Shown here in pieces: positions 19,712 to 55,350 of a stretch of DNA of 64,000 bases; within the stretch, counting starts at the first letter, position 1; each line of letters begins with the position of its first letter. Origin of the DNA: Hemiscyllium ocellatum (Eukaryota); the NCBI RefSeq assembly GCF_020745735.1, contig NC_083409.1, forward strand, positions 13,391,259-13,455,258, read 5' to 3'. A program made the position numbers and the translations under genes. A model generated the notes under the pieces. It was given only the letters and a program-made list of their open reading frames with translations, was not told the origin of the DNA and searched no databases.

Positions 19712-19990
19712 TGTCAGATTCCAGGGAGTGCAGACAGTTCACAGTTTTCTCCCATCTCAGTAACAAACGTCCAGCTGCTCTGAGCTCCTTCTTTCACTTC
19801 CTCTCTCAGTGAAGTTTCAACCTTGCGATCTGACAGTCCTTGCATTTATTTTTTACACTGGGGCTTTCTGCTGTGGTCAGAATCTCTAATAATAAGTGTC
19901 CAATCAGTGACAATCACAGCAGCTAAGAGCAGTCAGGACTGAGGAGCCAGGCTCACAGGGAAACACATTGGGAAGATCAAATCCATCCTT
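19712..19990 (-). promoter_or_regulatory. Conserved non-coding block with EICE (copy 1), candidate B-cell enhancer
   Basis: GGAAGTGAAA on the minus strand at 19792-19801, E-box CAGCTG 19772-19777, RUNX-type TGTGGT 19872-19877. 7 mismatches in 150 bp versus copy 2. Confidence 0.5.
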
Positions 19991-20749
19991 TTCAGATCCC
20001 ACTAAAAACTTCATCCCTCTCCCTGAGCACTCTTTACAAAAACAGAACAGTTCTGAAAAAGGTTCTCTTGACCCAAAATGTTAACTCTGCTTTCTCTCCA
20101 CAGATGGTGCCAGACCTGCTGAGCTTTTCCAGCAATATCTGTTTCTGTTTCTCATTTACAGCAACCACAGCTTTTTCAGCTTTTATTTAGTGTCAGACTC
20201 CTTGCTATCTTGGCCTTATCTTTGAGGATGATCTGAACCCCAAATCTCCACGTCACAGAGATCACTCACTCAAAATCTCTTTGCTTTGGGACTCCAAATG
20301 TGATCAATTCAATGTTGTCCTGTGCCACATCACAGCCACTGCCCTCTGTAAACTTCAGCTCATCCCAAACTCTGCTGCCCGTATCCAAGTTCGCACCAAG
20401 CCCCATCCCCAACCCCCACTGTCCTCACTGACCGACATTGGCTCCCGGTCCAACAACATCATGATTTACAAATTCTCATCCTTATTCTCAAACCCTACCT
20501 GTCCTTCAACCCTCCCTATCTCTGTAACCTCCTTCTAGCTGCCTCATTCTGTGTGGTTAGTAATCTTACATATATGGCTGTCTAATCCTTTATGCACATC
20601 ATTGAGAGATATTGTGAAACACTCAGGTCCCAGCACAGATCCTTGGGGACACGACTATCCACATTTTGCTCATTGGAGAGCACACACATTATCCCTCCTC
20701 TCTGTCTCCTGCCTCCAAACTAATTCCTAACCCAAGGCAAATTTGTGTT

Positions 20750-23290
20750 TTCAATTAATACGTTTCCATATTGATGAATAGTCTCCCAAACAGTGAAGCT
20801 AGGAGCAGGAGTAGCCCTTGGAGCTTGTTCCGCCATTCAATATGACAATGGCTGATCATCCACCACAATCGCCTGTTCCCACTTTGTCCCCGTAACCTTT
20901 GAACCCTTCTACCTTGAGAACTATATCGTGCCCTTTCTCGAAAGCATTCAGTGGTTTGAGCTCAATTTCTTTCAATGTCAGAAACTTCCACAGGCTTCCC
21001 ATTCACTGAATGAAAACATTTCTCTCCATCTCAGCCCTACATGGCCTTTCCCATATCCTTAAATTGTAATCCTTGGTTCTGGACTCCCCAGACATCAGGA
21101 ACATCCTGCCTTATCCTGTTAGGATTTTCGATTTTTCAATGTGACCCCCCTCAATCTTCTAACCTCCAGTGAATATAATCCTAACCAATCCAATTTCTCC
21201 TCAGGTCTAAGTGCTGTCCTCCCAGGAATCAGTCTGGTAAACCCTCGCTGCCCTCCCTCCACAGCCAGAACATTCTTCCTCAGATAAGGAGACCAAAACT
21301 GCACACAACAGAATCATAAAATCAACAGTACAGAAGAGGCCCTTCAGCCCATTAACTGTGTACCCAGCCAAACTACACTCAACCTGCACCAGTCCCACTT
21401 TCCAACACAAGGCCGATAGCTTTAAATGTTACGAAATTTCAAGTGTTCATCCAAGTAGTTTAAAAAGGTTGAGAGATTTGCCACCTCATCTACCATCCCA
21501 GGCAGTGCAAACCAGACCCCCAAGACCCTCTGAATGAAAACCTGCTCTTCAAATCCCCTCTAAAGCTCCTGTCTTTCACAGTGAATGTGTGCCAACTCGG
21601 AGTAAGGGGAAAAGCTGCTTTCTATTCATTCTGCCCATTCCCTTCATACCCTTATGCACCTCTATCAGGTCCCCATTCCACCTTCTCTGCTTCAAAGAAA
21701 ACAACCCGAGTTTATCCAGCCTCTCTTCATCGCTGAAATGCTTCATCCCAAGCAACATCCTGGTGATTATTCTCTGCATCCCCTCCAGTACAATCCTATC
21801 CTTCCGATCGCGTGATGACCAGAACTGCACACAGTACTCCAGCTGTGGCGTAACCAAAGTTCTGTACAGCTCCAACATCTCTTCCCTGGTCTTCTCATCT
21901 ATACCTGAAATGATAAAGGCAAGTGTTCTGTCTACCTTCATAAATACCTTGTTGACCTGTTATATCTTCCAAAGTTCATCACCTCACAGTTATCAGGGGT
22001 AAGTTCTATCTGACTCTGATCTGCCCATCGGACCGATCCAGTTAGATCTTCCTGTAACCTAAGACCTTCTTCCTCACTGTCAACCATCTGCCAAACCTTG
22101 TGTCATCTACAAATTCAGTCATCATCCACTCACCCCCACCCCTCACCTCTCACATTCTCATCTTCATTGTTTCAATACATCCTGAACAATAAGGGACCCA
22201 GCACTGATCCCTGTGGTATCCCACTGCACACTGGACCCAATCACACAAACAACTTTCTGCCTCCACCCACTGTCTCCTGTCTCTGAACCAGTTTTGGTTT
22301 GGATATTCCAGGTGTGGTCTCACTAAGACCCCATACAATTACAGCAAGACATCCCCGATCCTGTACTCAAATCCTCTCACTATGAAGGTAACATATCAGT
22401 TACCTTCTTCACTGCCTGCAGCACCTGCACGCTGACTTTCAGTGACTGGTATACACGGACACCCAGATCTTATTGCATCTCCCCATTCCCAATCTATCAC
22501 CATTCAGATAATAATCTGCTTCCAATTTTTGCTACTAAACTGGGTAACCTCACATTTAACTTCATTGTATTTCATCTGCCATCACTCAACATCTCCAAAT
22601 CACACTGAGGTATCTCTGCATCCTCCTCACAGCTCCCCCTTCCACCCAGCTTTGTGTCATCTGCAAACTTGGAGATATTACTCTTAAGTTCCCTCATCTA
22701 AACCATGAACAAATATCGTGAATAGCTGGATCCAGGCCTGTGGTACCCTTTCAGAAAAGAGGCCAGTTTATTTTTACTCTTTGTTTCCAGCCTGCCAACC
22801 AGTTCTCTATCCATGTCAGTACACTGCCCCCAGTCCCAGGAGTCTTAATTTTTTACGCTCTCTTCTGTGGGACTTATTAAAAACCTTGTAAAATTTCCAA
22901 ATGTACTATGTCAATTGCCTCCTTCTTGTCAAATTTGCTCTTTGCAGACTCAAGCAATTCCAGTCAATTTGTTAAGCATGATTTCCCTTTCCACAAACCA
23001 TGCTGACTCTGTCTAATCCTGTCACTGTCTTTCAGTGATTAAATCTTTCATAATAGACTCGAGTATTTTCAGGCTGATTGGTCTAAGTTGTCCAGTTTCT
23101 CTCTCCCTTCCATTTTAAATAGTGATGTTACATTAGCAACTCTCCAGTCAGTGGGGATTATCCCAGAATGTATAGAATCTTGAACATCAATGTTTCCAAA
23201 CATTTTGGGCATTTCCTGAAGTAATCTGAGGTGTAGACTATTGGATCCTGTGGATTTATTTGAATTTAATCCCATAAATTTTCCAAAACC
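20750..23290 (-). mobile_element. Stacked CR1-type LINE fragments
   Basis: LELYRTLVTPQLEYCVQFWS and LFSLKQRRWNGDLIEV motifs on the minus strand. Confidence 0.85.
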
Positions 23291-23342
23291 ATTTCGTGAA
23301 TAAAACTAGTTTTCTTCAGTGCTGCTATCAGTCTACACCCTG

Positions 23343-23636
23343 TCATCCCAAAATGTTTAGAACGTATTTGAGTTTTCCATTGTATACAAAGATCCAGAAT
23401 GCAGCAAATGCAGAAATTTCCTTTGCGCGTGTTGTCAGTGGTACTTTTAACAAATCACTTTTGGATAAGAATGACACACTACCTACCCTATCAATGCAAT
23501 CTCCTGGCCTGGGAATAGGGTACAAATCCATCTTTGTGACTACATTCACTTTCCAACTGTCTACACAGAATCTAATTGAAACATTTGGTTTCAGAACCAA
23601 CACTACAAGAGAACTCCAATTACTCTTACAGTGCAA
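23343..23636 (-). mobile_element. Ty3/gypsy reverse-transcriptase fragment
   Basis: SNWSSLVVLVLKPNVSIRFCVDSWKVNVVTKMDLYPIPRPGDCIDRVG...SKSDLLK resembles gypsy RT motifs 1-3. Confidence 0.85.
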
Positions 23637-23929
23637 TCAGGGTACCCTGTCCAGTTTATGATCAGTAATTTGCGGATTTTTAGATGGTTTGAATCTAGCC
23701 CAGATCCCTGGTTCTGCTGCTGGATTTACATAAAAATGTCAAATGAAGAGGGCAGTAGATGGGTGTTTCAGGGCAAAGGAATCTCTGGGTTTATTCAATA
23801 CAAAAGGTAAGTATAATACAGGAGCAAATGTAAATGTAATAAACAGTGAAATTACCAGTATCCATTATACAGAGAACAGTAATTAAATACACTATCAAAT
23901 TAAACACTGGTTATACACTACTAGGAGCT

Positions 23930-24330
23930 AGAGTGGAAAAGTGTTGCCCTGGAAAAGCACAGCAGGTCAGGCAGCATCTGAGGGACAGGAGAATCGATGT
24001 TTCGGGCATCAGCTCTTCATCGTGAAGGTTGTGGGAGTGGAATGGGGCTGAGAGATCAATAGGAAGGTGGGGCAGGGGGTGGAGGAAAGTAGCTGGGAAG
24101 GAGATAGGTAGATGCAGGTGGGGGGGAGGTGATAGTGATAGTTCAGAAGGGATGGTGGAGCAGATAGGTGGGATGGATGATGGATAGATTTGGAAGGTTC
24201 AAGAGGGTGGTGTCCAGTTGGAGGATTGGATATTCGTTGGGGGGTGGGGAGGGGAGATAACGAAACTAGTGAAAACAACATTGATGTCGTGTGGTTGGGG
24301 CGTCCCAAGGTGGAAAGTGAGGCATTCTTC
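23930..24330 (-). mobile_element. Penelope-like element 3' remnant
   Basis: Reverse complement of the gatgaag(a/g)gc...cccgaaac...gatgctgcctgacctgctgtgcttttccag terminal motif, plus a purine-rich arm. Confidence 0.65.
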
Positions 24331-24344
24331 TTCCAGACATAGTA

Positions 24345-24830: not shown

Positions 24831-24839
24831 GTAGCTTGG

Positions 24840-25493: not shown

Positions 25494-25529
<36 letters not shown>

Positions 25530-26219: not shown

Positions 26220-27130
26220 TCCTACACGGGAGAACTCCAATTACTCTGACAGTTCAGTCAATTGATTTTCCAACAAACATTGAGCTTCCTTTGTCACTTT
26301 GGCCAGTTTCTCTGGGTTTAGCCAAAATGGGTTTTGTTTTATTGGGTCTGAATTATCTATCTCCACATCATGTTCAATTAATGTGGTGCATCCAAGTGTA
26401 TCTTTTAAAGACCATGTATCAGTGCAGAATGTGGCCAAACAGTCCACCAAGTCCACTCTGCCATTCTATCATAGTTGATTTGTTTGTCAACCCCATTCTC
26501 CTGCCTTCTCTGTTACCCTTGATTGGTTTACCAATCAAGAACCTATCTATCTATACACTCAATGACTTGCCCTCCACAGCACTCTGCAGCAATGATTAAT
26601 CCACAGATTAACCACTCTCTGGATGAAAAATCTCCTCCTCATCTCAGTTCCAAAGGATGGCCCCTTCTGGGGCTGTGCCCTCTGGTCCCAGTCTCTCTGC
26701 CAAGTGGAAACATCGTCTCCATGTCTACTCTATCCAGGCCTCTCAGTATACTGTATGTTTCACTGAGATTTTCACTCATCCTTCTCAACTCCATCGAATA
26801 CTGATCGAGTACAGACCTCAACCACTCCTCAGACAAACTTCTTTGTATTCTCTGAGCAATCTCCCTCTGTCCCTCTGTTAATCTTTCTCCAGATACAAAA
26901 ATGCAGTATCTGAATTCTCTAATGCCTCTGAGTCTGTTCACCTCACAGGAGAAAGTTCACTTTGAGAATTGACCAATTCTCTTTGGCTCTCAAACTTTTT
27001 CTCATCCCCTTTCTGCTACACTCAGTGCTGGACACACCTCTACACGACTGAATGGTTCCTCAAAAACTGGGAGAGGAATTAAGGATGCTGCTTTCATAAT
27101 GTGTGGAGGTTGACCTACAACTTGACAAGT
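26220..27130 (-). mobile_element. Ty3/gypsy pol fragments (integrase start, linker, pre-RT) interrupted by a CR1 piece (about 26490-26875)
   Basis: TCQVVGQPPHIMKAASLIPLPVFEEPFSRV (27130 downward) and LGCTTLIEHDVEI...PIKQNPFWLNPEKL...LLENQL (26456-26241). Confidence 0.8.
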
Positions 27131-27140
27131 TTTTTTTTAA

Positions 27141-29220
27141 TGTATTCATTTTGTGGAATGTGAGCATCGCTGGCTGGCCAGCATTTATTGCTCATCCCTA
27201 GTTGCCCTTGAGAAGGCCCTTGAGCTATTCTTGAACTGCTGCAGTACACCTGCTGTGGGTTGACCAACAACACCATTAGGGAGGGAATTCCAGGATCTGG
27301 AGCCAGCAACAGTGAAGGGACACAATACATTTTCAAGTCAAGATGGCTTGGAGGGGAACTTGAAGGTAATGGTGTTCTCATATATCTGGTGCCCTTGTCC
27401 TTCCAGATGGAAATGGTTGTGTTTGGAAGGTGCTGTCTGAGGATCTTTGGTGAATTTCTGCAGTGCATCTTGTAGATAGTGCACACTGCTGCTGCTGAAT
27501 GTCGGCGGTAGAGGGCAAGGTTACATGTGGATGCTGTGCCTATCAAGCGGCTGCTTTGCCCTGAATGGTGTTCAGCTTCTTGAGTGTTGTTGGGGCTTCA
27601 CCAATCCAGGCAAGTGGGGAGTATTCCATCACATTCCTGACTTGTGCCTTGTAGATTGTGGCCAGGCTTTCAGGAGACAAGAGGTGAGGTACTTGCTGCA
27701 GTATTCTTAGCCTCTGACCTGCTTTTGTAGCCACTGTGTTTATTTGGTGAGTTTCAGCTGGCTATCAACTCCCAGGATGTTGATAGTGGGGGACGCATTG
27801 ATGGTAACACCACAGAATGTCAAGGGACACTGGTTAGATTGTTTCTTAAGGAAGGGGCCATCCTTTGGAACTGAGATAAGGAGGAGATTTTTCATCCAGA
27901 GAGTGGTTAATCTGTGGATTAATCATTGCTGCAGAGTGCTGTGGAGGGCAAGTCATTGAGTGTATAGATAGATAGTTTCTTGATTGGTAAACCAATCAAG
28001 GGTAACAGAGAAGGCAGGAGAATGGGGTTGACAAACAAATCAACTATGATAGAATGGCAGAGTGGACTTGAAGAACTGTTTGGCCACATTGTTATTGGTG
28101 ACAGTCAGAGTCTAGCATTTGTATGGCATGAAAGTTATTTATCACTTTTCAGCCCAAGCCTGGATATTATCCAGATCTTATTGCATTTGAACTTGGATTG
28201 CTCCAATCTCTGAGGAGTTGGAAATGGTGCTGAACATCGTGCAATCATCAGTGAACATCACCCCTTCTGACCTTGTGGAGGGAAAGTCATTGATGAAGCA
28301 GCTGAAGATAGTTGGGCGAAGGAGACAACCCTGAGGAGCTCCTCCAGAGATGTCCTGGAGCTGAGATGACTGACCTCTAACAATCATGACCATCTTCCTA
28401 TGTGTCAGGTATGGCTCTAAATACAAAAGATTTTGCCAATGATACCCAGTGATTCCAGTTTTGTTAGGACCTCGAACCATTTGTTGACATCATGTGGGGT
28501 GAATCGAATTGGCTGAAGACTTTTATCTGTAATGCTGGAGACCACTGGAGGAGGCCAAGATGGATCATCCACTTGGCACCTCTGGTTGAAGATTGCTGCA
28601 AAAGCTTCAGCTTTATCTTTTGCACTGCTGTGCTGGGCTCTTCCATCATTGGGGATGTGGATATTTGTGGAGACTCCTCCTCCAGTGAGATGTTTAATCA
28701 TCCAACACCACTCATGACAAGATGTTTCAGGACTGCAGTGCTTAGACCTGATCCGTTGGTTATGGAATTCTTTAATTCTGTCTATCATTTGCTGCTTATG
28801 CTGTTTGGTATGCAAGGAGTCTTCTTTCGTGGCTTCGCCAGGTTAATACCTCATCTTAATGCATGCCTCGTGCTGTTCCTGGCATGCCCTCCTGAATTCT
28901 CCATTGTTGGTCCCCTGGTTTGATGGTAATGGTTGAGTGGGGGATACGCCGGGCTGTTATGTTTCAGATTGTGCTGGAGCAGAATTCTGCTGCTGTTGAT
29001 GGCCCACAGTGCCTCATGGATGCCCAGTCATGAGTTGTGAGATTGGTTGTAAGTCCGTCCCAGTTAGCGTGTTGATAGTGTCACACAACATGATGGATGC
29101 TATTCTCAGTGGAAGGCAGGAGTTGGCTTTCAAAAAGACTGTGCGACACTCACTCTGACTGATACTGCATAGGACAGATGCATCTGCAGCTGGCGGATTC
29201 CGCCAGCTGCAGTATGACAT
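27141..29220 (-). mobile_element. Second LINE family (CR1/L2 superfamily) composite insertion flanked by TTTTTTTTAA
   Basis: RT-tail motif KAGQRLRILQQ...IYKAQVRNVMEYSPLAW; 10-bp duplication at 27131-27140 and 29221-29230; nested CR1 piece at about 27850-28080. Confidence 0.75.
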
Positions 29221-32149: not shown

Positions 32150-33930
32150 ATATAACTTCTGCCGGTTTGTCAAGAGTGCTAGTTCATAAAGTGCAGGTTA
32201 CAACAAAATTTGCTGCACATCTTTTATAATGGACTCCAGTATTTCTCCCTCTACTGATGTCAAGCTAACCGGTCTCTGCCTCCCTTCTTAAATAGTGGGG
32301 TTATGTTAGCCACCCTCCAATCCATAGGAACTGCTCCAGAGTCTAGAATTCTGAAAGATGACCACAAATGCATCTATTCTTTCTAGTGCCACTTTTTCTT
32401 AAGCATTCTGGGGTGAGGGGCTCAGGCTGCCAAAGATATTTCATGGTTCCACTTTGCCCTCCTATTTTTTTAAGCACCTCCCCACACTTTCTCTCCTCCT
32501 GAAGGGCCTCTCTTGTTTTTGATGCTCTGTCGCTGACAAAGGTTTCCTTCTTTTCCTTTCCCAAACTATCCATATTCCTCGACATCCAGGATCCCAGGAG
32601 TTGCTGCCCTTGCTTTTCTTTCTGAGCTGGCCTTGAATTCTCAATGTCTCACATTAAAAAGCTTCCCACTTTCCAAATGTAGACTGACCTGCAAGTAGCT
32701 GCTCCCAGTCGATATTTGCCAGATCCTGTCTCATAACATTGAAATTGGCTTTGCCTCACTTTAGACAATTACCTTTCTGCACTACCCTTATTCCTTTCCA
32801 TAATAATTATAAAACTTATGGACTTATGTTCAATATCTGCAAAATGCTCACCCACTGACTCTTCAACTATTTGACTGGTTTCATTACCTAGGATTGAGTC
32901 CAGCACTGTCCATGTTTAGAGGGACTATCTACATACTGGCACCCAAAGCTCTCCTGGATGGACTTTAAAAATACCACCATTCACACAAAGGCAATCCCAG
33001 TTCATGTTAGAGAAGTTGAAACTCCTTGCTAACATAACCCTATTCCTCTCACACCTCTCTGTGATTTGCCAACATATCTCCTCCTCTCTCTCCATCTGAC
33101 TATTGGGAGGTCTATAGTACAATCTCAGCAAAGTCATTGTTCTTTTTGTATTTTTAGCTTCACCCAGATGGCCTCGTTTGAAAAGCCTTCCAAGGAATGC
33201 TCCTTAAATCCAGCAGTGATGGTCTCCTTTATCAATACTACATTACACCACCTGTCCTGCATTCCCTCTATCCCACCTGAGACTTCTCTACCCTGGAATG
33301 TTGAGCTGCCAGTCCTATCTTTGTTCAATCATGTCTCAGCATTTGCAGCAATATGATATTCCCACGTGCTGGTCAATGCTCTCAGTTCAACCTCCTTACT
33401 CGTCAAGCTCCTTACATTAAAATAGATACAGTTCAGCTTTCTGGTCCTCCTGCATTCCTGATCCTGTCCTAGTGGTTACCCAGTGATTTTCTGTGTCGCC
33501 CTTATTCTCCCAAGAAGGGAAACATCCAGCATTTCCCTTGTCAATCCCCTTAAGAATTCTATACATTTCAATGAGATTCCCTCTCATTCTTCTAAACTCC
33601 AGGGATCAGATTCCAAACCTGTTTGACCTTTGCCCATAAGACAATCGCTCCGTACCAGGAATCAGTCAAGGGAACTATCACTGAACTACATCCAATGTAG
33701 CTCCTGTCCTTTATTCAATAAGGAGCCTGATACTGGACACCATACTCCAGATGTGCCCACACCAAGCCCCTAACCCTAACCCCTGTACAGCTGCAGTAAA
33801 ATGTCCCTGCTTTTAGATTGCATTCCCTTTACAAGGAGCACCAACACTCCATCTGCCTCCGGATTCACTTGCTGTAGCTGTGTACTAACTTTGTGATTCT
33901 TGTCCCCCACATTACACTCCATTCTGCCAA
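32150..33930 (-). mobile_element. CR1-type LINE fragments (endonuclease and RT-tail regions)
   Basis: LYYRPPNSQMEREEEICWQI-type endonuclease motif; the 32.8-34.0 kb part is duplicated and inverted at 47.46-48.68 kb. Confidence 0.8.
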
Positions 33931-35229
33931 TATTTCTCCAAAGCCCAGCTGTATCTAATATTCAGCAGGATGGACCCCTTCACTGGGAAATAGTTGTTTG
34001 TGACTAGAATAATGACACATCTCTGAGAATCACATTAATAACTGTTTTATTGATGCTTTTATTTCCTACCCACCATATCACAGCCTTGAATAATCTTATA
34101 CCCCTCAATGAGGTTCTTTCTCAACCTTCACTGCTCCACGCAAAACAACCTCAACCTTTCCAATCTTTCCTCATAACTAACTCTCTATTGCAGGCAGCAT
34201 CCTGGTAAATCTCTGCACACTCTTAAGTACAATCAAATCCTTCCCAGAACGTGGTGACCACGACCTGTCCACCTCTCTCTCTATCTTCCTTTTTGACTCA
34301 CATTTGCCACTTCTTTCTCTCTACCTCTCTGTCTCTCTCCCACTTTTCATCTCTTTCATATTCTCTTTCATATTCTCTCTCTCTCTCTCTTTCTCTCCAT
34401 CAACCACACCATTTCTACCTCCCTCTATCTCTCTCAGTCCCCTGCCATATCTCACATCTGTCTCAGATGCTCCTCCCTCTATTCCTCGATTACACACACA
34501 CACTCCCTCTAACTCTCTCTCTCTCTCTGTCTCGCTTCTCTCCCTTTCTCACAGTGTCCCAGGTGATGACAGTTGAATGCAGAATAAATCTCCTTCTGCT
34601 CTGCCCCGATAATGGATGTTAACCTTTGACCCCAGAAGCATTTTTTTTTCCTGGAGTAAGGCCCCATTTCCCACAGTGGCCAAGGTTTAGCATCTCTCAG
34701 GAAGATGGACAGATTCTTGTCAAATGAAGGGCAGTTCTGTGCTGTTGGCCTATTCTCACTGGGGACTGATTTGGACACAAACCTCATTCCATGAAGGCAC
34801 AGCAGAGAGAGGAGATCCTCAGGCCATCAGTGTGAGCTGGAGGGATGGGGCAGGACAGGTTGTGACCCAGTGACCCATCCTGTCCATTCACAACATGTTC
34901 CAAATCCTTCCCCTCTCCTTCCCATTCCATGATCAGTCTCTGAGTCAACGTGTTTCACTGGGATGATGTTCAGAGCATCACAGTTACAACAGAAGGGAAC
35001 TGGCCCCACACCAACCATGGTGTCCATGATATAATGGACACTCCAACAGAGACCAACAAACATTGAATTCAGTTCACGGGGCTGCCCAATGGAGAGACAT
35101 GGACCTCCTTCCCACTGAACCTCCCAATTGAGACCAGAAAACATGGGCCTCCTTCCCACTGAACTTGCTAATTGAGACCAGTAAACATGGGGCTCCGAAG
35201 AACTGGACTTTCCAACAGAGATGAGTGGA

Positions 35230-36460
35230 TGGCTGAGTTTTTGAAGAATTAATCAAGAAGGTAGATAAAGGTAGAGCAGTACACTCTCTCTACATGAACT
35301 TTAGCAAGGCCTTAGACAAGGTTCCCCCCACCATGCTCAGTAAGATTATATCACATAGGATCAAGGGAGAGCGAGCCAATTGGATATAAAATTGGCCTGA
35401 TGGTAGGAGGCCGAGGCTGGTGAGAGACAGTTGTTCTTCAGACTGGAGGCTAGTGACCAGCCGTCTGCCACAAGAAATGATCCTGGATCCACTGTTGGTC
35501 TTCATTTATATGAACAATGTGGATGAGAAAATAGCAGGAATGGTCAGTAAGTTTGTGGCTGACATTAAAATTGTTGGCATCGTCGACAGGGAAGAAGGTT
35601 ATCCAAGAGTGCAATGTCATCTTGATCAACTGGGCCAGTGGGTCAACAAATCCAGATGGAGTTTAATTTCGATAAATGGAAGGAGTTACCTTTTGGTAAG
35701 ACAAACCAGGGCAGGAATTACACAATTCATGGTAGAGCCATGGGGAGTGTTGTTGAACAGAGAGACTGAGGGGTACAGGTACATAGTTCCTTGATAGTGA
35801 TGTCACAGGTAGACAGGGTGGTGAAGAAGGTATTTGACACGCTCACCTTCACTGGTCAAAGCAGGGAGTACAGGAGCTGGGACATCATGTGACAGCTGTA
35901 TAAGACATTGATTTGGCCACATTTGGACACTGTGCACATTTCTGCTCACCCTGCTATAGGAAGGAAGTTATTACACTGGTTTGGATAAAATAAAGATTAA
36001 CAGGGATGTTACCAAGATTGGAGGGTTTGAATTATAAGGCGAGGATGGATAGGCCGAGATGTTCTTCCAGGGAATGCAGAAGATTGAGGGGTGACCAGAT
36101 AGAGGTTTATAGAATCATGAGGGTCATTGATAAGATGAATATTCAACGTCTTTTCCCCAGAGTAGGAGAGTCCAATACTAGAAGGAATAGATTTAAGTTG
36201 AGAGGGGAAAGAGTTAGAAGGGCCCTGAGTGGCAACCTTTTCACACAGAGGATGGCGTGTATGTGCAATGACTGCCAGAGGAAGTGGTAAAGGTGAGTAC
36301 AATTACTACATTTCCGGGACATTTTTACAGGAACATGGATAGGAAGGATTCGGAGAGATTTGGGCCAAACACAGGCAAATGGGACTGGTTCAGTTTTGGA
36401 AACTTGGTCGGCATGGATGAGTAGAGCTGAAGGGCCTGATGCCATGCTGTAAACCTCCAT
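35230..36460 (+). mobile_element. 5'-truncated CR1-type LINE inserted into the minisatellite of module copy 2
   Basis: SKFVADIKIVG and RECRRLRGDQIEVYRIM motifs with a 3' actctatga tail; absent from copies 1 and 3. Confidence 0.85.
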
Positions 36461-38484
36461 AACTCTATGATGATGGTCCATCTTCCCATAGGACCAGTAA
36501 ACATGGACCTCCTTCCCACTGGATGCTTCAGAAGAGACCAGTAAACATGGGCCTCTTTCCCTCGGGACTGTCCAATACGTGAGCTGCAAACCCTACATCC
36601 TCTCCATCACGTAGGTCTCTTATTTCAGTCTTAACGGCATTTTCCATCTCTGCACTACCTCAGCCCCTTGACCACAGAAACCCTAATTCCTGTTTGTCCT
36701 GCCTTCTAACTATATGATTCCAATGTCCTTTCCCAGCTTCCTGATGCCAAATTCCATAAACGCCAGCTTGTCTGATATGGCGTGGTCTCTTCCCTGTCTT
36801 TCCATGTGTTGTTCCAGAATGAACCCTGACCTCACTGCCAGCCAATTGCCTCCATGGCCTCCCTCCTCCATCACTCTGTGCCCTGCTGCAGACTCACATT
36901 CTCTCCCTCCCCCTTCCATCTTCTCTCGCTGGTCTCCTGCGCATTGCTGCTTCCTCCATCCCACCATTGACAGCAGAGCCTTCAGACCCCTAGAGCTCTC
37001 TGACCCCCTGCCCTTCATCCCTCCCCTCTCAATTGTTGTGCTATTGAATATACTGTTGAGTGCCATTACTTTTGGTTCACTGTTCACTTGCCATTGATTT
37101 GCTGATATAGTCCAGTAAATCTAGTCTGGCCTGTTTTCTGAGTTTGTTCAAGAGCGTTTTGCTTGAGAAAACACTTGTCTGTAAACTGGGTTGTCTGTTT
37201 CTCCCAGGTTTTGTGTAAAGGTGAGACTAAGTGTGTGTAAGCTCTTATACAGCACAGACAGAGGTCACTGGGCCTATTGTGACTGTTAGTCAAATTAGTT
37301 CAATGAGTCCCATTTCCCCAGCCCTTCCTGTATAACCTTGTAATGGTTTCCTTTTCAGCTATTTCTCCAAATGCCCTTTTGAAAGTTGCTGTTGAATCCA
37401 CTTCCACTCACCTTGCAGACAGTCATCATGAACTCGCTGGATAAAAAATGTTCCTATCTTCGCTCTTGTTCTTCAGACCCTTTCTGAAATGTGTGCCCTC
37501 TGGTTACTGACCCTCCTGCCTGGAGAAACATTTTTTCCTGTATTTACTGCATCCAAACTCTCTATTTGTGAACCCCTCATTGAGTGAGACCTATTTCCAG
37601 CACAGGGGGAGAACATTCAGCCTGTCAGGTAAATGCTGTCATTTCATGGAGCAATCCAGTCAGTCCCACCCCCTCCCCTACTCGACCCCCAGGGCCTTGC
37701 AGGTTTATTTCCATCAAGAGCCCATCCAATCTGCCATTGCAATCCCTGAGTGTCTTCACTTGCCTCACCTGAATGGGCACTAATTTTGAAGTCATTGCCA
37801 ATTGCTGCTAAAAACAAAGTCCTTCCTGATATCCCATATCTCTTGCCCAACAAAATGCAAGGTATTCTCAATGTGAAGACAGGATTTTGTCTCCACACGG
37901 ACTGTGCAGTGGTCACTCTGACTGATATTGTCATGGACAGCTACACCAGCAGCAGGCAGATTGGTGAGGGTGATAGTGAGTATGTTTTTCCCTCTTGTTG
38001 GTTCCCTCACCACCTGCCCCAGGTCCAGTCTAGCAGCTGAATCAGGTGGAACTTGACCAGCTTGCTCAGTAGTGATGCTTCTGAGAAGCTCTTGATGGTG
38101 GACTTTGAAGTGCTTTACTCAGAGTATATCCTGCATCCTTCCCACCCTCAGTGCTACCTCCAAGTGTTGTTCAACATGGAGGAGGACTGACTGCTCAGTT
38201 GAGGCTGGAGGGATGGGCGGTGCTATGTGGTAATCAGCAGGAGGTTTCCTTCTCCATGTTTGACCTGCTGTCATGAGGCTTCATGGGTTCCATAGTTAAT
38301 GGTGAGGACTCCCAGGGCAACTCCCTTCCGACTGTACACACCACTGTGTTGCCTCCCCTGCTTGGTCTATCCCGCCAGTTAAAAACTGAATGAGGGAACA
38401 ATTCTGTGCAGGTTTCACAGCTTGGAGACAGAGCTGCTGCTGGATTTTGTTTCTGATCTCCGAGTGCAGGTGTGTGTGTTTGTG

Positions 38485-38700
38485 AGCTGCTCCGAGCTCC
38501 TTCTTTCACTTCCTCTTTTGGTGAAGTTTCAACCTTGCGATCTGACAGTCTTTGCAGTTATTTTTTACACTGGGGCTTTCTGCTGTGGTCAGAATCTCTA
38601 ATAATAAGTGTCCGATCAGTGACAATCACAGCAGCTAAAGGACTGAGGAGTCAGGCTCACTGGGAAACACATTGGGAAGGTCACAGCCATCCTCTTCAGC
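38485..38700 (-). promoter_or_regulatory. Conserved non-coding block with EICE (copy 2)
   Basis: TTTCACTTCC at 38504-38513; direct repeat of 19.78-19.99 kb. Confidence 0.45.
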
Positions 38701-39339
38701 TCCCGGTACAAACTCCATCCCTCTCCCTGAGCACTGTCTGCTGCTCAACCAGACTCTTTTCAACCTGGGCCTCATCTTTCCTGCTGATCTGAGTCCCACA
38801 TCTTCCACATCACAAAGATCAGCCACTGAAAATCTCAGCCATCCTGTTGTGACTCCAAACATGGGCATTCTAATGTTGTGCTTGCACACATCACAGCCAC
38901 TGCACTCACTCTTCCCAAAGTCTGCTGCCCATGTCCAGACTTGCACCAACGTCTGTTCCCCCAATCCCCTGCACACCATGTCTACATTGGCTCCTGGACC
39001 AGCAACACTTCGGTCATCAAATTCTCATGCTTGTTTTCAAATCCATCCCTGTCCTTCACTCTCCCTATCTCTGTAACCTCCTCCAAACTGTGTTGCTCAG
39101 TGTGGTCTGCAATCTTGGATTAATGGCTCGCTATTCCTTCATCCATGTCATTGAGAAATATCATGAAATGCTGAGGTCCCAGCGCAGATCCCTGGGGACA
39201 CCAATATTCACATTATTGGAGAGCACACACATTATCCCTCTTCTCTGTCCCCTACATCCAAAAGCCGCCTACACCCAAATGAATTCCTCACCAAAGACAG
39301 ATATTTTTTCTCTCTTTGGCTTAATGGTAGGAAGCAGAG

Positions 39340-40130: not shown

Positions 40131-41439
40131 TCCATTGTTTCCATGTTTATGAACAGTCTCTCAAACATAGAAGCAAAGGAACTAAGAGCAGGAGGAGGCC
40201 ATTCAGTCCTTTGAGTCAGTTCCACCATTCAACATGACCAGGGTTGATTATTCAACTTAGCCCCCGTTCCCATTTTCCCCCATAACTCTTAATCCCTTCA
40301 GTCCCAAGAACTGTACCTATCATCTTCTTGAAAACATTTAATGGTTTGGGCTCAACTGCTTTCTGTGACAGAATATTCCACCAACTTCCCACTCTCTGGC
40401 TAAAGAAATGTCTCCTCATCTCAGTCCAAAATGGCCTTTCCCTTTTCTTTAAACTAATTCCTGGTTCTGGATTCTCCAGTCATTAGGAACATCCTTCCTG
40501 TGTTTTTCCGGTCTTGTCCTGTTCGGATTTTAAAGGTTTCAGTGCGGTTCCTCTCAATCTTCTAACCTCCAGTGAATATAGTCCTAACTGATCCAGTTTC
40601 TCAACAGATATAAGTGCTGTCGTCCCAGGGATCAGTCTGGTAAACCTTCATTTCCCTCCCTCCACAGCCAGAACATCATTTCTCAGATACTGAGCCCAAA
40701 ACTGCACACAATAGAATCATAAAATCACACCGTACAGAGGAGGCCCTTTGGCCCATTAACTGTGTACCAGCCAATTTACACTAAACCTACACCAGTCTCA
40801 TTTTCCAACACAAGGCCCATTGCTTGAATGTTATGACATTTCAACTACTCACCCAAGTACTTTTTAAGGTTTATGAGGTTTCCCACTTCAACTACCTTCC
40901 CACGGTGTGCATTCCAGAACCACATCATCCTCTGGGTGAAAAACAATTTCCTCAAAACATCTTGAAACCTGTTACCTTTCACACTGAATGTGAACCAACT
41001 TGTTATTGAGCCTCCACCCACCCACCCCCCTCGACAAAGGAGAACAGCTGCTTTCTCTCCTCCCTGTCCATTCCCCTCATAACCTTATACACCTCGATCA
41101 GGTCCCCCCTCCACCTTCTCTGCTCTGAAGAAAACAAACCGAGCTGTTCCAATTTCTCTTCATCACTAAGAGGTTCCATCCCACACAACATCCTGGTGAT
41201 TCCCCTCTGCACCCCATCCAGTGCAATCACATCCTTCCTACAGTGTGGCGACCTGAACTGCACACAGTACTCCAGCTGTGGCCTAACCAATGTTCTGCTT
41301 AACTGCAACATATCCTCCTGCTTTTATAGCAATTACCTGAATGACAAATGCAAGTGCCTTCATAACTGCTCTGTTAACCTGTCTTGCCACATTCAGAGAT
41401 CAGTGGGCAAGTACCCCAAGATCACTCTGTGCCACTGAG

Positions 41440-46080: not shown

Positions 46081-48689
46081 TGCATTAGTGGGGAATACAC
46101 AGTGTACATTGTGTCCAGGAGCATCTTGAAAAGATGTCTTTCTCTGTTTCCATTTTCAGCTCCAGGGCTGTCATGAAGGAGCTGAAAGAATCTTTGGTGA
46201 TGAAGTTTCTGAACGGTGAGGGCTGTGTGAAGGGTTTCAGCAGTGACTGATGATTGCAGCTCCTTGTTCAGTCTGCTCCTCCCCGCCACTGATCAAGCCA
46301 TGTAACCTCCTGTCACACTGAGTGACATTGCAATCCATATCATAGTGTCAGTGCCAGCAAACAGCAGCATCACAGTCTGACCCACTGGGACAGGCATCAC
46401 TGCCTGACATCAAAGAACGGAGCCTGAACCCCCTCCCCCCATGCTCATAAACCCTACAGCATCGAAAATATACTGACACGCAGCCGCTTCTATTAAACAC
46501 TGACCACCAGAGAACCCCTTCAGAGGTAGAAGTCAGCATCGAGACTGAGAAAGAGGGAGAGATGGGGTGATGCGAAGACAAAGAGACGGAAAGGGGGAGA
46601 GAGAGAGAAAAAAAAGAGAGAGAGAAAGAGAGAGACGGAGAGGGAGCCAATTATTGGGAGCCAGCTGTTGTCCATGTCTGAGGGAAGGAGTCTTATTCCA
46701 ATTATGTCAGACCTTGGTGAGGCCGCACCTGCAGCACTGGGTCCAGTTTTGATTTCCTTCCCGATGGAAGGATAGACTCACCCAGACTCTACCTGGAAGG
46801 AGTGCAGCAAAGATTCGTGAAGCTGATTCCTGGCATAAGGGGATACTCTGATGAGGCCAAATGGAGTCTATTTGACATTACTCCCTGGGGTTTAGTGGAG
46901 CAGGTTGGAGGGACTGAATGGCCTCCTGCTGACCCGATTCCTTCTGTTCTGTTGATGGTGTCAGTGTGTGCTGATGAGAAATGGAGTTCCTCTCTGAAAC
47001 TGCTCCTGATTTAATGATGGAGCTGGAAGCCAGGAGAAGCTGCAGAAGCTTCAATTTCTAACCAGAAACTGACCACTCGACCTCTTGGACACCATGAGCT
47101 GGTTTACTGTGCCCAGCACTGACATCCCCCTCCCTCCCTCCCTGACAAGGGTCTGTCTGATTGGATTCTCATTGTTATATTTTCCCAGTTCTGGAAGAGA
47201 CTCCATCCTCTGATCCAGCATCGCCGCACATTCCCAAACCTGAGATCCAGATCCGGAGTGGACCTGTTCCTCTCAAATATCAATTCCAATGATGACATTC
47301 CACTGGGTTCCTTGCTGCAGGGAAAGGATCAGCCAGGGCCATATTCTTCAGCCATGGAGAATAATGATGGGATATTTGGAGTGTGAGTTTGATGATGTAA
47401 ATGTGAACCATTGCAGCAAAGACATTACAGATGGTTTGTACAGACAGCAAAAACCCAAACCAGAGCATTGTTACAAATGACTTTTTCCCAGTGAATGGGG
47501 TCCATCCTGCTGAGTATTCGATAAAGCTGGGCTTTGGAGAAATATTGGGCAGATGGAGTGTAATGTGGGGGATATGAATCACAAAGTTAGAACGCAGCTA
47601 CCGCAAGTGAATCCGGAGGCAGATGGAGTGTTGTTGCTCCTTATAAAGGGAATGCAATCTAAAAGCAGGGACATTTTACTGCAGCTGTTAGGGTTAGGGG
47701 TTTGGTGAGAGCACATCTGGAATATGGTGTCTAGTATCAGGCTCCTTATTGAAGAAAGGACAGGAGCTGCATTGGATGTAGTTCAGAGATGATTCCCTTG
47801 ACTGATTCCTGGTATGGAGCGATTGTCTTATGAGCAAAGGTCAAACAGGTTAGGAATCTGATCCCTGGAATTTAGAAGAATAAGAGGGAATCTTATTGAA
47901 ATGTATCAAATCCTTAAGGGGCTTGACAGGGGAAATGCTGGATGTTTCCCTTCATGGGAGAGTAAGGGCGACACAGAAAACCACTGGGTAACCACTAGGA
48001 CAGGATCAGGAACACATGAAGACCAGAAAGCTGAACTGTATCTATTTTAATGTAAGGAGCTTGACTCGTAAGATGGTTGAACTGAAAGCATTGACCAGCA
48101 CGTGGGAATGTCTGCAATTGTTGCAATTGCTGAGACATGATTGAAGAAAGATAGGACTGGCAGCTCAACATTCCAGGGTAGAGAAGTCTCAGGTGGGATA
48201 GAGGGAATGCAAGAGTGGTGTGTGTATTGCATTATTGATAAAGGAGACCATCACTGCAAGATTGAAGGAGCATTTCTTGGAAGGCTCTTCAAATGAGGCC
48301 ATCTGGGTAAAGGTAGAAATAACAAAAGGACAATCACTTTGCTGAGATTATACTACAGGCCTCCCAATTGTCAGATGGAGAGAAAGGAGCAGATATGTTG
48401 GTAAATCACAGAGAGGTGTGAGAGGAATAGGGTTATATTAGTGGGGAATTTCAACTTCTCTAGCATGAACTGGGATTGCCTTTGTGTGAATGGTAGAAAT
48501 TTTAAAGCCCACAGGAGAGCTTTTGGTGCCAGTACATCGGTAGTCCCTCTAAACATGGGCAGTGCTGGACTCAATCCTTGGTAATGAAGCCAGTCAAATG
48601 GTTGAAGAGTCAGTGGGTGAGCATTTTGGAGATAGTGAACATACGTCCGTAAGATTCATAGTTATTATGGAAAGGAGGAAGGGTCATCC

Positions 48690-49924: not shown

Positions 49925-49955
<31 letters not shown>

Positions 49956-50109
49956 TGGGAGCTTTGAGAGAGAGGGAGATGGAGCTTGTAGAGAGAAAAG
50001 AGGGATTAAAATCAGAGTAAGATCCATGCAGCTGAGGTAGAGAGGGAGGAGGAGGATACAGCGAGAGAGAGAGAGATGGAGTTCAAGGAGTTGTATATCA
50101 AAGATAAAT

Positions 50110-53100: not shown

Positions 53101-53540
53101 CATGATGACTTTGAAACTTACAGAGTTATGGTCATTATCACCAAAATGCTTACACTAGGTTTGCCCATTCTCCAAACAAACATTTCCCTCACTGACACAG
53201 GGAGCATGTACCTCATTCCTGTTGGAGAATGAGCTGAGACTCCTGCAATACTACATTCAGGCTGCATCGACCTGCTCACTTATCGTCACACCCTCCTGTC
53301 CCTAACCACTGACTATAATTTGAAGTATTTAACCTACAAGGTATGACTGCCTCCCCAAACACAGTGTCCAGGTAACTCGCCTCCTCCCCTATGTGTCGCA
53401 GTGTTTGAAGCTCAGATTCCAGCTCATCAACTCTGAGCTGGAGTGCCTTGAGCAACCAACACTTGCTGTAGATGTGGTCACTCTGAGCTACAATGGGCTC
53501 CACCAGCTTCCCCATCGTACAATTACTACACATCGCCCGG
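50110..53540 (-). mobile_element. Long decayed CR1-type LINE (ORF1 zinc-finger/zipper to ORF2), interrupted by a Penelope-like remnant (about 52640-53040)
   Basis: MCSNC...KCWLLKALQLRVDELESEL (53533-53276), endonuclease and RT remnants at 50.1-52.2 kb; PLE terminal motif cctgatgaagggcttttgc at 52911. Confidence 0.8.
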
Positions 53541-53849
53541 CCCTGTATGTGGGAATTATTTGAGGAGTTTTTAATGTTTTTTAAAAAATTGCTGTTAGTC
53601 TTTAATTTTTAATCTGTAAAATATTCCCATCAATGAGACAGAGAAGGCTCCAGCTCAGAAGGAGGCTCTTCAGCCACTCATGTCAGTGCTAGCGGTTTAG
53701 TAACCTCATTCACAATGAACATCTCCGTTGAATGTTTGTTGTCAGGAAGTGATTGAGTCTGGTTTTAGAGACAGAATAACGGACAAATATGAACTGGTCT
53801 GAGAGAATCAGCATGGATTTACAAAGGTTCAGACATTGAAGGTTCAATA

Positions 53850-54130
53850 TAGTGGCTCAGTGGTTAGCACTGCTGCCTCACAGCACCAGGGGCCCAGGTT
53901 CAATTCCAGCCTCGGATGTGTGTAGAGCTTATACATTCTCCCTGTGTCTGCGTGGGTTTCCTCCCACAGTGTAAAAATGTGCAGGTCAGGTGAATTGGCC
54001 ATTCTAAATTGCCCACCGTGTTAGGTGCATTAGTTCCGAGGGAAATGGGTCTGGGTGGGTTTCTCTTCGGAGGGTCAGCGTGGACTTGTTGGTCCACAGG
54101 GTCTGTTTCCACACTGTAGGGAATCTGATC
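53850..54130 (+). mobile_element. tRNA-derived SINE (HE1-like)
   Basis: gtggctcagtggttagcactgctgcctcacagc head; B-box-like ggttcaattcc. Confidence 0.8.
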
Positions 54131-55069
54131 GAATCTTTAACTAACGAGGTTACACATTGTTAGGAGGTCCCTAATGTGGGATTTAAGGGAATGTCGATGG
54201 CTATTGACCATAGGGAATTCCAGAAGACATTTAAGAACATTCCACAAAAGAAACATGGAATCAGATCTTGCGCTCCACAATTACTTGATGAAGGAGCACC
54301 GCTCAGAAAGCTGGTGTTTCCAAATAAACCTGTTGGACTACAATCTGGTGTTCTGTGATTTTTAACTTTGTACACGACAGTCCAACACTGGCACCTCCAA
54401 ATCATGGAATCGGTTGGAATTTGAGAAATGTATTTACCTTGTGTCAGAAATGGGTCCGTCTAGGAGACAGAGAGGAAGGATAATGTGTATGTGTTCCAAT
54501 GAGCCAGATGTGAGTAGTGGTGTTGCCAGGGATCTGTGCTGGGATCTCATCTTTTCACGATATTTCTCAATGACTTGGATGAAGAAACAGAGAGCCATAT
54601 ATCCAAGATTGCTAACCACACTGAGGTGGCTTGGAGGAGGTCACAGAGATAGGGAGGATGGAAGGACAGGGAGCGGTTTAAGAACAAGGATGAGAATTTG
54701 AAAATCAAGGTGTTGCTGGACCAGGAGCTGATGTCGGTCAGTGAGGATTGTGGTGGTCATGGTGGGACGGAAGATAGGGACGGGGGTGTGGGGTGGACTT
54801 GGTGTGAGTTGGAACAACGATAGCAGAGTTTGGGATGAGCTGATATTTACGGAAGGCAGTGGCTGTGACGTGGGCCTGGATAACATTGGAATTGTCACAT
54901 TTGGAGTCTCAAAAACATGGTTGAGATTTTCAGTGGCTGATAATTGTGATGTGGAGGACTTGGGCCTCAAATCAGCCTCAAAGATGAGGCCAAAGTTATA
55001 AAGAGCCTGGTTGAGCAGCAGACAGTGCTCAGGGAGAGGGATGGAGCTTGTACCAGGAGCTGAAGAGGA

Positions 55070-55350
55070 TGGCTTTGATCTTCCTAATGTGTTTCCCAGT
55101 GAGCCTGGCTCCTCAGTCCTGACTGCTCTTAGCTGCTGTGATTGTCACTGATCGGACACAAATTATTAGAGATTCTGACCACAGCAGAAAGCCCCAGTGT
55201 AAAAAATAACTGCAAAGACTGTCAGATCGCAAGGTTGAAACTTCACCAAGAGAGGAAGTGAAAGAAGGAGCTCGGAGCAGCTGGGTATTTGTTACTGAGA
55301 TGGGAGAAAACTGTGAACCATCTGCTCTCCCTGGAATCTGACAGCACAGG
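55070..55350 (+). promoter_or_regulatory. Conserved non-coding block with EICE (copy 3, inverted)
   Basis: GGAAGTGAAA at 55254-55263; inverted repeat of 19.71-19.99 kb. Confidence 0.5.

What the first reader, a model, noticed from the sequence alone, without database searches (positions are those of the whole stretch)
19712..55350. Triplicated, selectively conserved block with a perfect PU.1/IRF composite element upstream of each V
Seen: a block of about 270 bp occurs three times (19.71-19.99, 38.49-38.70, inverted 55.07-55.35 kb). Copies 1 and 2 differ at 7 of 150 bp (about 95%), while co-duplicated LINE flanks are about 83-87% by eye. All three keep GGAAGTGAAA (19792-19801, 38504-38513, 55254-55263) and a RUNX-type TGTGGT; copies 1 and 3 keep an E-box CAGCTG. 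The site reads in the V sense direction, 4.5 and 5.7 kb upstream of the two ATGs. Established: GGAAnnGAAA EICEs bound by PU.1/Spi-B and IRF4/8 are core to the mammalian Ig kappa 3' and lambda enhancers. Inference: a per-cluster enhancer placed 5' of V that travels with cluster duplication.
Basis: partly seen in the sequence, partly recalled or inferred. Interest (0 to 1): 0.7.

Follow-up and report, generated by a model that had tools for sequence, protein, structure and literature searches.

The report
Conserved block upstream of shark kappa genes
A roughly 325-base non-coding block that travels with each shark antibody kappa light-chain mini-gene changes about three to six times more slowly than its flanks and carries binding-site motifs of mammalian light-chain enhancers, so it is a credible but untested gene switch; this window adds that one copy has no gene beside it.

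Summary
The block occurs three times: 19707-20031, 38485-38735 (truncated) and, inverted, 55348-55024. All three copies keep GGAAGTGAAA and TGTGGT. Copies 1 and 3 lie 4.5 and 5.7 kb upstream of two divergently oriented kappa V genes and read in the V sense.

It is not a dispersed transposon. In raw whole-genome reads of a sister species, depth on the block is about 100, against 62 for the V promoter. The true repeats beside it reach 2,000-10,000.

Among close paralogues the block diverges at 0.16-0.42 of the rate of its collinear flanks (p 8e-5 to 3e-13). It sits at the same position and orientation in two Chiloscyllium punctatum kappa clusters. It is absent from one lambda-like locus.

Corrections:
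- Copy 2 has no V, J or C, yet its block is kept as well as the others.
- The flanks are 74-84% identical, not 83-87%.
- Against a distant cluster, conservation of the whole block is weak, and the deepest-conserved part is a 38-bp RUNX/kB-like stretch, not the EICE.
- Constraint specific to the motifs is not demonstrable.

Best reading: a cluster-linked cis-regulatory element, probably an enhancer, whose function is untested. Gene conversion is the main rival. The scan has already reported this same block at five other kappa clusters of this genome.

The parts
19707..20031 (-). Block copy 1 (V-sense is the - strand). It lies 4.5 kb upstream of V1 and carries 12 private substitutions relative to the family consensus.
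   Evidence: reads of three species show the consensus letter at 19839, 19845 and 19957
38485..38735 (-). Block copy 2. It lacks the V-proximal 66 bp and the E-box, and has an 8-bp deletion. It belongs to an orphan upstream fragment (34063-39262) with no V-J-C.
55024..55348 (+). Block copy 3 (V-sense is the + strand), 5.7 kb upstream of V2.
19792..19801 (-). ETS/IRF composite motif GGAAGTGAAA in copy 1, within AGAGGAAGTGAAAG.
   Evidence: identical to the lambda-B core printed in PMC4872103
38504..38513 (-). ETS/IRF composite motif in copy 2.
55254..55263 (+). ETS/IRF composite motif in copy 3.
19860..19895 (-). Deepest-conserved core of copy 1: kB-like GGGGCTTTCT (19860-19869), RUNX-type TGTGGT (19872-19877) and MEF2-like YTAWWWWTAR (19886-19895). 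A 38-bp stretch here is identical in 5 of 6 copies, including the distant cluster L003a.
   Evidence: motif names are from memory of consensus sequences
19772..19777 (.). E-box CAGCTG, 14 bp from the composite motif. The same spacing is seen at 55278-55283 and in L001, L003a and L003b. It is lost in copy 2.
20194..20719 (-). Z, the collinear distal flank of the unit (also 38750-39262 and 54462-54993). It is 76-83% identical between copies. The unit's 5' edge lies at about 20719, 39262 and 54461.
   Evidence: no Pfam family in its ORFs
19425..19709 (.). Y, a high-copy repeat inserted between X and the block in copy 1 and in L001 only.
   Evidence: read depth 1,900-2,400; joint 19419>19707 in reads or contigs of three species shows copies without it
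20043..20161 (.). A very high-copy repeat inserted just distal to the block, in copy 1 only.
   Evidence: depth about 10,100; absent from c2 and c3
16861..17170 (-). Island 2, a second conserved upstream island about 1.6 kb from the ATG (also 34599-34929 and 58657-58962). It is 86-90% identical between copies.
   Evidence: depth 86
15266..15480 (-). V1 promoter (ATTTACAT octamer variant, TATA-like TTTATAAAG) and leader exon. ATG at 15325.
   Evidence: 96% identical to 60835-61015
14807..15112 (-). V1 exon, followed by an RSS (heptamer CACAGTG, nonamer ACAAAAACC).
14166..14205 (-). J1 (YTFGKGTKLRLS), with its RSS upstream.
3999..4322 (-). C kappa exon of cluster 1.
   Evidence: tblastn 95-96% to C. 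punctatum kappa chains
60835..61063 (+). V2 promoter and leader exon (ATG 60990). The gene is cut by the N run at 61064-61263.

Best explanation
The block is a cis-regulatory module that belongs to the shark kappa light-chain minilocus. It sits about 0.7 kb inside the 5' edge of the duplicated unit, 4.5-6.4 kb upstream of V and in a fixed orientation. Most likely it is an enhancer.

**Proposed mechanism (inferred, not shown).** In B-lineage cells a PU.1/Spi-family ETS factor and an IRF4/8-type factor bind the composite AGAGGAAGTGAAAG. An E-protein binds the CAGCTG 14 bp away. RUNX, kB-like and MEF2-like sites lie 58-94 bp further out (the RUNX site at 70 bp). Together they would open the cluster and drive the V promoter.

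**Shown here.** Linkage to the cluster, a copy number close to that of the V promoters, slow divergence, and fixed position, orientation and motif spacing.

**Inferred.** Every step of factor binding and of activity.
For: 1. **Collinearity.** The region from the V promoter to about 5.4 kb upstream is collinear in c1, c2 and c3 and in C. punctatum loci L001 and L003, with the block always V-sense.
2. **Rate.** The block diverges at 0.16-0.42 of the rate of flanks X and Z in all six close pairs (Fisher p 7.7e-5 to 3.2e-13). In the upstream region only the promoter is better kept.
3. **Whole-cluster scan.** Against L001 the block (336 bp at 94%) and a J-C intron island are the longest well-conserved stretches. 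Against L003 (73% overall), 60-bp windows of 90% or more fall on the block, promoter and leader, V FR1, the J-C intron island, the C exon, and three further non-coding spots: one in the leader intron and two 3' of C.
4. **Copy number.** In raw reads of a sister species, depth per position is about 100 on the block, 62 on the promoter, 86 on island 2 and 77-87 on X. Neighbouring repeats reach 540-10,100.
5. **Sharing across species.** The two other species hold 0.31-0.52 of the block's sampled words but only 0.18-0.24 of the words of the 5.5-kb stretch.
6. **Motifs.** The composite 10-mer is exact in 5 of 6 copies. The 14-bp spacing to the E-box is invariant. The 10-mer equals the lambda-B core. 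The only 325-bp windows of the 64 kb with four or more of eight lymphoid motif types are at c1 and c2 (the motif set was chosen after the fact).
7. **What it is not.** It is not coding, not an annotated exon and not a structured RNA.
Against: - There is no functional, chromatin or RNA evidence.
- Orphan copy c2 has no gene, yet it has only 4 private changes. c1, beside an intact V-J-C, has 12.
- Against the distant cluster L003 the whole block is 81-82% identical and the alignable flanks 71-78% (p 0.009-0.43). High similarity within a subfamily and modest similarity between subfamilies is also what gene conversion gives.
- The EICE is no better conserved than neighbouring core positions, and it is degenerate in L003b (GGAAATGAAG).
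- Motif calls were made after seeing the sequence.
- Known Ig light-chain enhancers lie in the J-C intron or 3' of C, not 5' of V.
- A better-placed candidate, the J-C intron island, exists in the same cluster.
Confidence: 0.55

Rival explanations
1. The block is a patch homogenised by gene conversion and has no function of its own. In an array of about 200 copies, conversion keeps some segments near a family consensus. The motifs are then chance content of one ancestral sequence copied many times.
For: - The orphan c2 is kept as well as the gene-linked copies.
- Identity is 92-96% within the subfamily but about 81% to L003, barely above the flanks.
- c2, c3 and L001 all sit within 4-5 changes of one consensus, even though the flanks group c1 with L001 through the shared Y insertion.
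- One chance EICE in a 325-bp ancestor has odds of about 1%, but many other motifs could equally have been noticed.
Against: - Conversion alone does not explain why the same sub-kilobase islands (promoter, block, island 2, J-C island) stand out while the sequence between them drifts.
- A 38-bp run is identical to L003a against a 73-75% background, which has a chance of roughly 1e-3.
- Position, orientation and motif spacing are retained in a distant cluster whose VJ is joined in the germline.
Confidence: 0.22
2. The block is a regulatory element of another class: an upstream promoter of sterile or non-coding transcripts, a silencer, or a boundary at the 5' edge of the cluster unit.
For: - It lies only about 0.7 kb inside the edge of the duplicated unit.
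- It contains an A/T-rich TATA-like stretch, and in c1 and L001 a CCAAT box.
- The conservation data do not say which kind of regulator it is.
Against: - No annotated exon maps to it.
- The CCAAT box is a CpG-to-TpG variant absent from c2 and c3.
- No CTCF-like match was noticed by eye.
- RNA evidence could not be obtained.
Confidence: 0.13
3. The block is a fragment of a transposable element, such as a LINE 3' end or a SINE, that happens to lie near the clusters.
For: - It is flanked on both sides by repeats (Y at 19425-19709 and the insert at 20043-20161).
- A LINE lies 0.7 kb beyond it in c1 and 1.4 kb beyond it in c2.
- Its depth is about 1.6 times that of the V promoter, so some copies may lie outside intact clusters.
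Against: - Its depth is 20 to 100 times lower than that of the adjacent true repeats and matches other single-per-cluster segments.
- The LINE is absent from c3, so the block is not its tail.
- It has no ORF or Pfam domain, and no terminal repeats or tail were seen.
- It is absent from the 39-kb lambda-like locus L005 and occurs in the loci and the window only at collinear kappa positions.
Confidence: 0.05
4. The block encodes a structured non-coding RNA.
For: It is a conserved non-coding sequence of RNA-gene size.
Against: - No Rfam family matches.
- Folding z-scores are -0.80 and -0.65.
- The alignment fold has a positive (penalising) covariation term, and only 4 of 81 pairs are compensated.
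Confidence: 0.02

Closest known systems
Mouse Ig lambda enhancers E-lambda2-4 and E-lambda3-1 (lambda-B PU.1/IRF4 composite, lambda-A MEF2 site, E-boxes)
   Same: The 10-mer GGAAGTGAAA is identical to the lambda-B core (sequence from PMC4872103). An E-box and a MEF2-consensus match lie within about 100 bp. One element serves each J-C or cluster unit. The lambda-A/MEF2 and E-box architecture is recalled from memory.
   Different: The mouse elements lie 3' of C and the shark block lies 5' of V. No sequence homology beyond the motif was tested. Activity and factor binding are unknown in the shark. The PU.1 site lacks the 5' A-tract of lambda-B.
Mammalian Ig kappa 3' enhancer (PU.1/IRF4 EICE plus E2A site)
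   Same: It has a GGAANNGAAA composite next to an E-box, in a kappa-type light-chain locus.
   Different: There is one 3' enhancer for a whole translocon locus, against one block per minilocus. The position relative to V-J-C differs. Homology was not tested.
Per-cluster light-chain enhancers of teleosts (Atlantic cod IgL, recalled from memory; the paper was not found in the library)
   Same: In the cluster-type organisation each V-J-C unit is thought to carry its own regulatory DNA.
   Different: As I recall, these were reported near or downstream of C. No sequence comparison was possible.
The same block at other kappa clusters of this genome (scan notes s1-203484, s1-198111, s1-228462, s1-216793, s1-228455)
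   Same: These describe the same element, position and motif set. It is called a candidate enhancer there too.
   Different: This window adds an orphan, truncated copy without V-J-C, a copy-number estimate from raw reads, a negative lambda-like locus, and the weak result against a distant cluster.

Membership tests
EICE-containing Ig light-chain enhancer | A GGAANNGAAA ETS/IRF composite is present and retained among copies. | tested here: met
   It is exact in c1, c2, c3, L001 and L003a. L003b has GGAAATGAAG.
EICE-containing Ig light-chain enhancer | The composite site is under stronger constraint than the surrounding sequence. | tested here: inconclusive
   No motif-level excess of conservation was found. 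The longest invariant run is the RUNX/kB-like stretch, not the EICE.
EICE-containing Ig light-chain enhancer | Location in the J-C intron or 3' of C. | tested here: not met
   The block is 4.5-6.4 kb 5' of V in c1, c3, L001 and L003.
EICE-containing Ig light-chain enhancer | B-cell-specific, orientation-independent enhancer activity, with cooperative PU.1/IRF4 binding. | not testable with these tools
   This needs a reporter assay, EMSA or ChIP, or ATAC/H3K27ac in shark B cells.
Conserved non-coding element under purifying selection | It diverges more slowly than collinear neutral flanks. | tested here: met
   The divergence ratio is 0.16-0.42 (p 7.7e-5 to 3.2e-13) in six close pairs.
Conserved non-coding element under purifying selection | The conservation persists between distant paralogues or species. 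| tested here: inconclusive
   Against L003 the block is 81-82% and the flanks 71-78% (p 0.009-0.43). However, 60-bp windows of 90% or more and a 38-bp identical run occur within the block.
Dispersed transposable element | High genomic copy number, unlinked to the Ig clusters. | tested here: not met
   Depth is about 100 on the block, 62 on the V promoter and 540-10,100 on the adjacent repeats. The block is absent from L005.
Dispersed transposable element | Element hallmarks: an ORF, terminal repeats, a tail, or continuity with a LINE body. | tested here: not met
   No Pfam hit was found in the block or Z ORFs. The LINE is absent from c3. Only a 9-bp internal inverted repeat exists, which is not conserved in L003a.
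Structured RNA gene | An Rfam match, thermodynamic stability or covariation. | tested here: not met

The most novel reading that the evidence does not exclude
The block is the autonomous B-cell enhancer of every shark kappa minilocus and works through a PU.1/Spi-IRF4/8 composite site. That would mean ETS/IRF-driven light-chain activation already existed in the common ancestor of cartilaginous and bony vertebrates. In cluster-type loci the enhancer would sit 5' of V and be copied with each cluster. Orphan copies such as c2 could then persist as shared or shadow enhancers within the array.
Probability: 0.3. Interest if true: 0.75.

Novelty: new variant of a known kind. Interest (0 to 1): 0.55.

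Why it matters
I found no enhancer described for any cartilaginous-fish immunoglobulin cluster in two full-text searches, and Malecek et al. 2008 (PMC2435157) describes none for shark clusters; it only proposes that a promoter-enhancer complex forms at each gene. How about 200 independent miniloci are switched on one at a time is an open question for allelic and cluster exclusion in sharks.

A defined 325-bp candidate with a mutable 10-bp site makes that question testable by reporter assays and by chromatin profiling. It would also date the PU.1/IRF logic of light-chain enhancers.

The orphan copy is a natural experiment. It can separate selection on the block from gene conversion.

Tried and rejected
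- **Transposon reading.** Rejected on read depth and on the absence of the LINE from c3.
- **Structured RNA.** Rejected.
- **Coding exon.** Rejected. There are stops in all frames, no annotated shark kappa model maps to the block, and the Z-region ORFs have no Pfam family.
- **More clusters from chromosome-level assemblies.** C. punctatum GCA_047496795.1, Hemiscyllium and Scyliorhinus returned no DNA because the files are too large. Only five loci of the older C. punctatum assembly could be read, and two of them (L002, L004) have too little upstream sequence.
- **Motif-level constraint from reads.** The variant table shows only the best-supported differences, so invariance of the EICE across about 100 copies could not be read off.
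- **Summed contig depths (X1, X25, X35).** These are not copy numbers and were not used.
- **Literature.** Searches found no paper on shark light-chain enhancers. This does not prove that none exists.
- **Sequence look-up in the scan's findings.** It returned nothing.


Full report
**Setting**

The window is part of a cartilaginous-fish kappa light-chain array. Cluster 1 lies on the minus strand:
- promoter and leader, ATG at 15325;
- V exon 15112-14807 with a heptamer/nonamer signal;
- J at 14205-14166 with its own signal;
- C exon 4322-3999.

Its J-C intron is 9.8 kb and contains a reverse-transcriptase ORF on the opposite strand.

Cluster 2 lies on the plus strand. Its promoter and leader (ATG 60990) are 96% identical to those of cluster 1. 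The gene is cut by the N run at 61064-61263, and the sequence after the run is unrelated. The two clusters therefore point away from each other and share 45 kb of upstream DNA.

The V region is 85-86% identical in protein to kappa chains of Chiloscyllium punctatum. The runs that hold 0.60-0.73 of the stretch's words belong to a coded 'organism A', taken here as the source species. Two further species hold part of the words.

**The observation**

- c1 is 19707-20031.
- c2 is 38485-38735. It is truncated on the V-proximal side and has an 8-bp deletion.
- c3 is 55348-55024, inverted.

GGAAGTGAAA occurs in the window only at these three places, where about 0.12 occurrences are expected by chance. 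TGTGGT is in all three copies. CAGCTG is in c1 and c3. The motif reads in the V sense, 4,476 and 5,736 bp from the two ATGs.

There are two errors. The flanks are 74-84% identical, not 83-87%. Copy 2 is not upstream of a V.

**What the block belongs to**

A self-comparison and a three-way alignment show collinearity from the V promoter to about 5.4 kb upstream. It holds across c1 (15.2-20.72 kb), c3 (61.06-54.46 kb, inverted) and, from island 2 outward, c2 (34.06-39.26 kb). The block lies about 0.7 kb inside the distal edge of this unit.

The LINE that follows in c1 (20762-21960) and c2 (40137-41382, with reverse transcriptase at 42.2-42.7 kb) is missing from c3. The block is therefore not a LINE tail.

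c1 differs from c3 by two insertions next to the block, Y (19425-19709) and 20043-20161. Both are very high-copy repeats.

c2 has no promoter, V, J, C or J-C island anywhere in 21-34 kb. Its collinearity stops at 34063, beside a repeat (32784-34004) that has a 90% twin at 47470-48684.

**Is it a dispersed repeat?**

Raw whole-genome reads of a sister species were laid on 15200-20750 at 80% likeness or more (about 1.93 Gb read). Per-position depths were as follows.

| Segment | Depth |
|---|---|
| Block | about 100 |
| V promoter | 62 |
| Island 2 | 86 |
| X | 77-87 |
| Unconserved spacers | 10-30 |
| Repeat at 16130-16501 | 540-1,170 |
| Repeat at 17804-18547 | 530-5,500 |
| Y | 1,900-2,400 |
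| Repeat at 20036-20221 | about 10,100 |

The block thus has the copy number of a once-per-cluster segment, about 1.6 times that of the promoter. This fits the three blocks for two promoters seen in this window.

Reads and contigs of three species also carry the direct X-block junction of c3 (joint 19419>19707). That arrangement is therefore common and shared.

**Other clusters**

Five loci of the older C. punctatum assembly could be read.
- L001 is collinear with c1 and includes the Y insertion. Its block is V-sense, 6.4 kb upstream of V.
- L003 is a distant kappa cluster (V 66-70% identical in protein) whose V and J are joined in the germline. Its block is V-sense, 4.8 kb upstream. A second, inverted copy with its Z flank lies 3.7 kb further out.
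- L002 and L004 have too little upstream sequence to reach the block.
- L005, a 39-kb lambda-like locus, has no block, island 2 or promoter match.

**Conservation**

Identities between copies:

| Segment | Close copies (c1, c2, c3, L001) | Against L003 |
|---|---|---|
| Promoter | 93-96% | 84-87% |
| Block | 92-96% | 81-82% |
| Island 2 | 86-90% | 74-76% |
| X | 83-91% | 71-78% |
| Z | 76-83% | no collinear Z match |

Among the close copies, the divergence of the block is 0.16-0.42 of that of X plus Z (Fisher p 7.7e-5 to 3.2e-13). Against L003 the contrast between block and flanks is weak (p 0.009-0.43).

A scan of the whole cluster gives a fuller picture. Against L001, the block (336 bp at 94%) and a J-C intron island (371 bp at 94%) are the longest well-conserved stretches. 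Against L003 (73% overall), 60-bp windows of 90% or more fall on:
- the block;
- the promoter and leader;
- V FR1;
- the J-C island;
- the C exon;
- three further non-coding spots, one in the leader intron (15161-15220) and two 3' of C (3575-3674 and 2515-2579).

Within the block, a 38-bp stretch is identical in five of six copies. It carries a MEF2-consensus match, a RUNX-type site and a kB-like decamer. The composite site is exact in five of six copies, and its 14-bp spacing to the E-box never varies.

The EICE is not better kept than its neighbours, so constraint specific to the motifs is not shown.

**Two observations that cut against a simple reading**

First, the orphan c2 has only 4 private changes in 249 columns. 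c3 and L001 each have 5. c1, next to an intact V-J-C, has 12. In all three species the reads carry the consensus letter where c1 deviates (19839, 19845, 19957). Three explanations are open: c2 lost its gene recently, the block works at a distance, or gene conversion keeps the copies close to a consensus.

Second, the within-subfamily identity is far higher than the between-subfamily identity. This is also the signature of concerted evolution.

**Alternatives tested**

- No Rfam family matches.
- Folding z-scores are -0.80 and -0.65, with no covariation.
- No annotated exon maps to the block.
- The block and Z ORFs have no Pfam domain.

In a post-hoc scan for eight lymphoid motif types, only the c1 and c2 block regions reach four or more types per 325 bp.

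**Comparison with what is known**

The 10-mer equals the core of the mouse lambda-B PU.1 site as printed in PMC4872103. From memory, the lambda enhancers combine this PU.1/IRF4 site with a MEF2 site and E-boxes, and the kappa 3' enhancer combines an EICE with an E2A site. The shark block resembles both in content. It differs in lying 5' of V and in being copied with each minilocus.

I found no paper describing an Ig enhancer in cartilaginous fish.

The scan itself has already reported this block at five other kappa clusters of this genome, with the same interpretation. Those notes agree with this report, but they are not independent evidence.

**Verdict**

The block is a cluster-linked, slowly evolving non-coding module. 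It is most likely regulatory (0.55), and specifically an EICE-dependent B-cell enhancer with a probability of about 0.3. Gene conversion without function is the main rival (0.22). No step of the proposed mechanism has been shown.

Noticed in passing
window 13589-14100 (- strand), J-C intron just downstream of J1: This is a second conserved non-coding island: 371 bp at 94% against L001 and windows of 90% or more against the distant cluster L003. It contains CAGCTG, TGTGGT and an octamer-like CATTTGCAG. Its position matches that of a mammalian intronic kappa enhancer.
   Followed up: partly
window 16861-17170; 34599-34929; 58657-58962: Island 2 is a roughly 300-bp upstream island about 1.6 kb from the ATG. 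It is 86-90% identical among copies and is present in L001, L002, L003 and L004. Its read depth is that of a once-per-cluster segment.
   Followed up: partly
window 34063-39262: This is an orphan upstream fragment of a kappa cluster (island 2, block, Z, then a LINE) with no promoter, V, J or C. Collinearity stops 59 bp from a repeat at 32784-34004, which has a 90% twin, inverted, at 47470-48684.
   Followed up: partly
L003 10232-10585 (C. punctatum BEZZ01000502.1): The V and J of this kappa cluster are fused in the germline, with no recombination signals between them and a splice donor directly after J. The upstream block is still present.
   Followed up: partly
window 4400-14100: The J-C intron of cluster 1 is 9.8 kb, against about 3.5 kb in L003. 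It contains antisense retroelement sequence (RVT_1 ORF at 7054-7356, + strand).
   Followed up: partly
window 26428-26667 and 28090-27851: A 240-bp inverted repeat pair, 97.9% identical and 1.2 kb apart, encloses a weak reverse-transcriptase ORF (28178-28480). Its nature was not determined.
   Followed up: no
window 15440-15455 and 60875-60890: Both V promoters carry ATTTACAT, a one-mismatch variant of the octamer ATTTGCAT. It lies upstream of a TATA-like TTTATAAAG.
   Followed up: no
window 61064-61263: A 200-N run cuts cluster 2 just after its leader exon, and the sequence beyond it is unrelated to a V gene. It was left as is.
   Followed up: no
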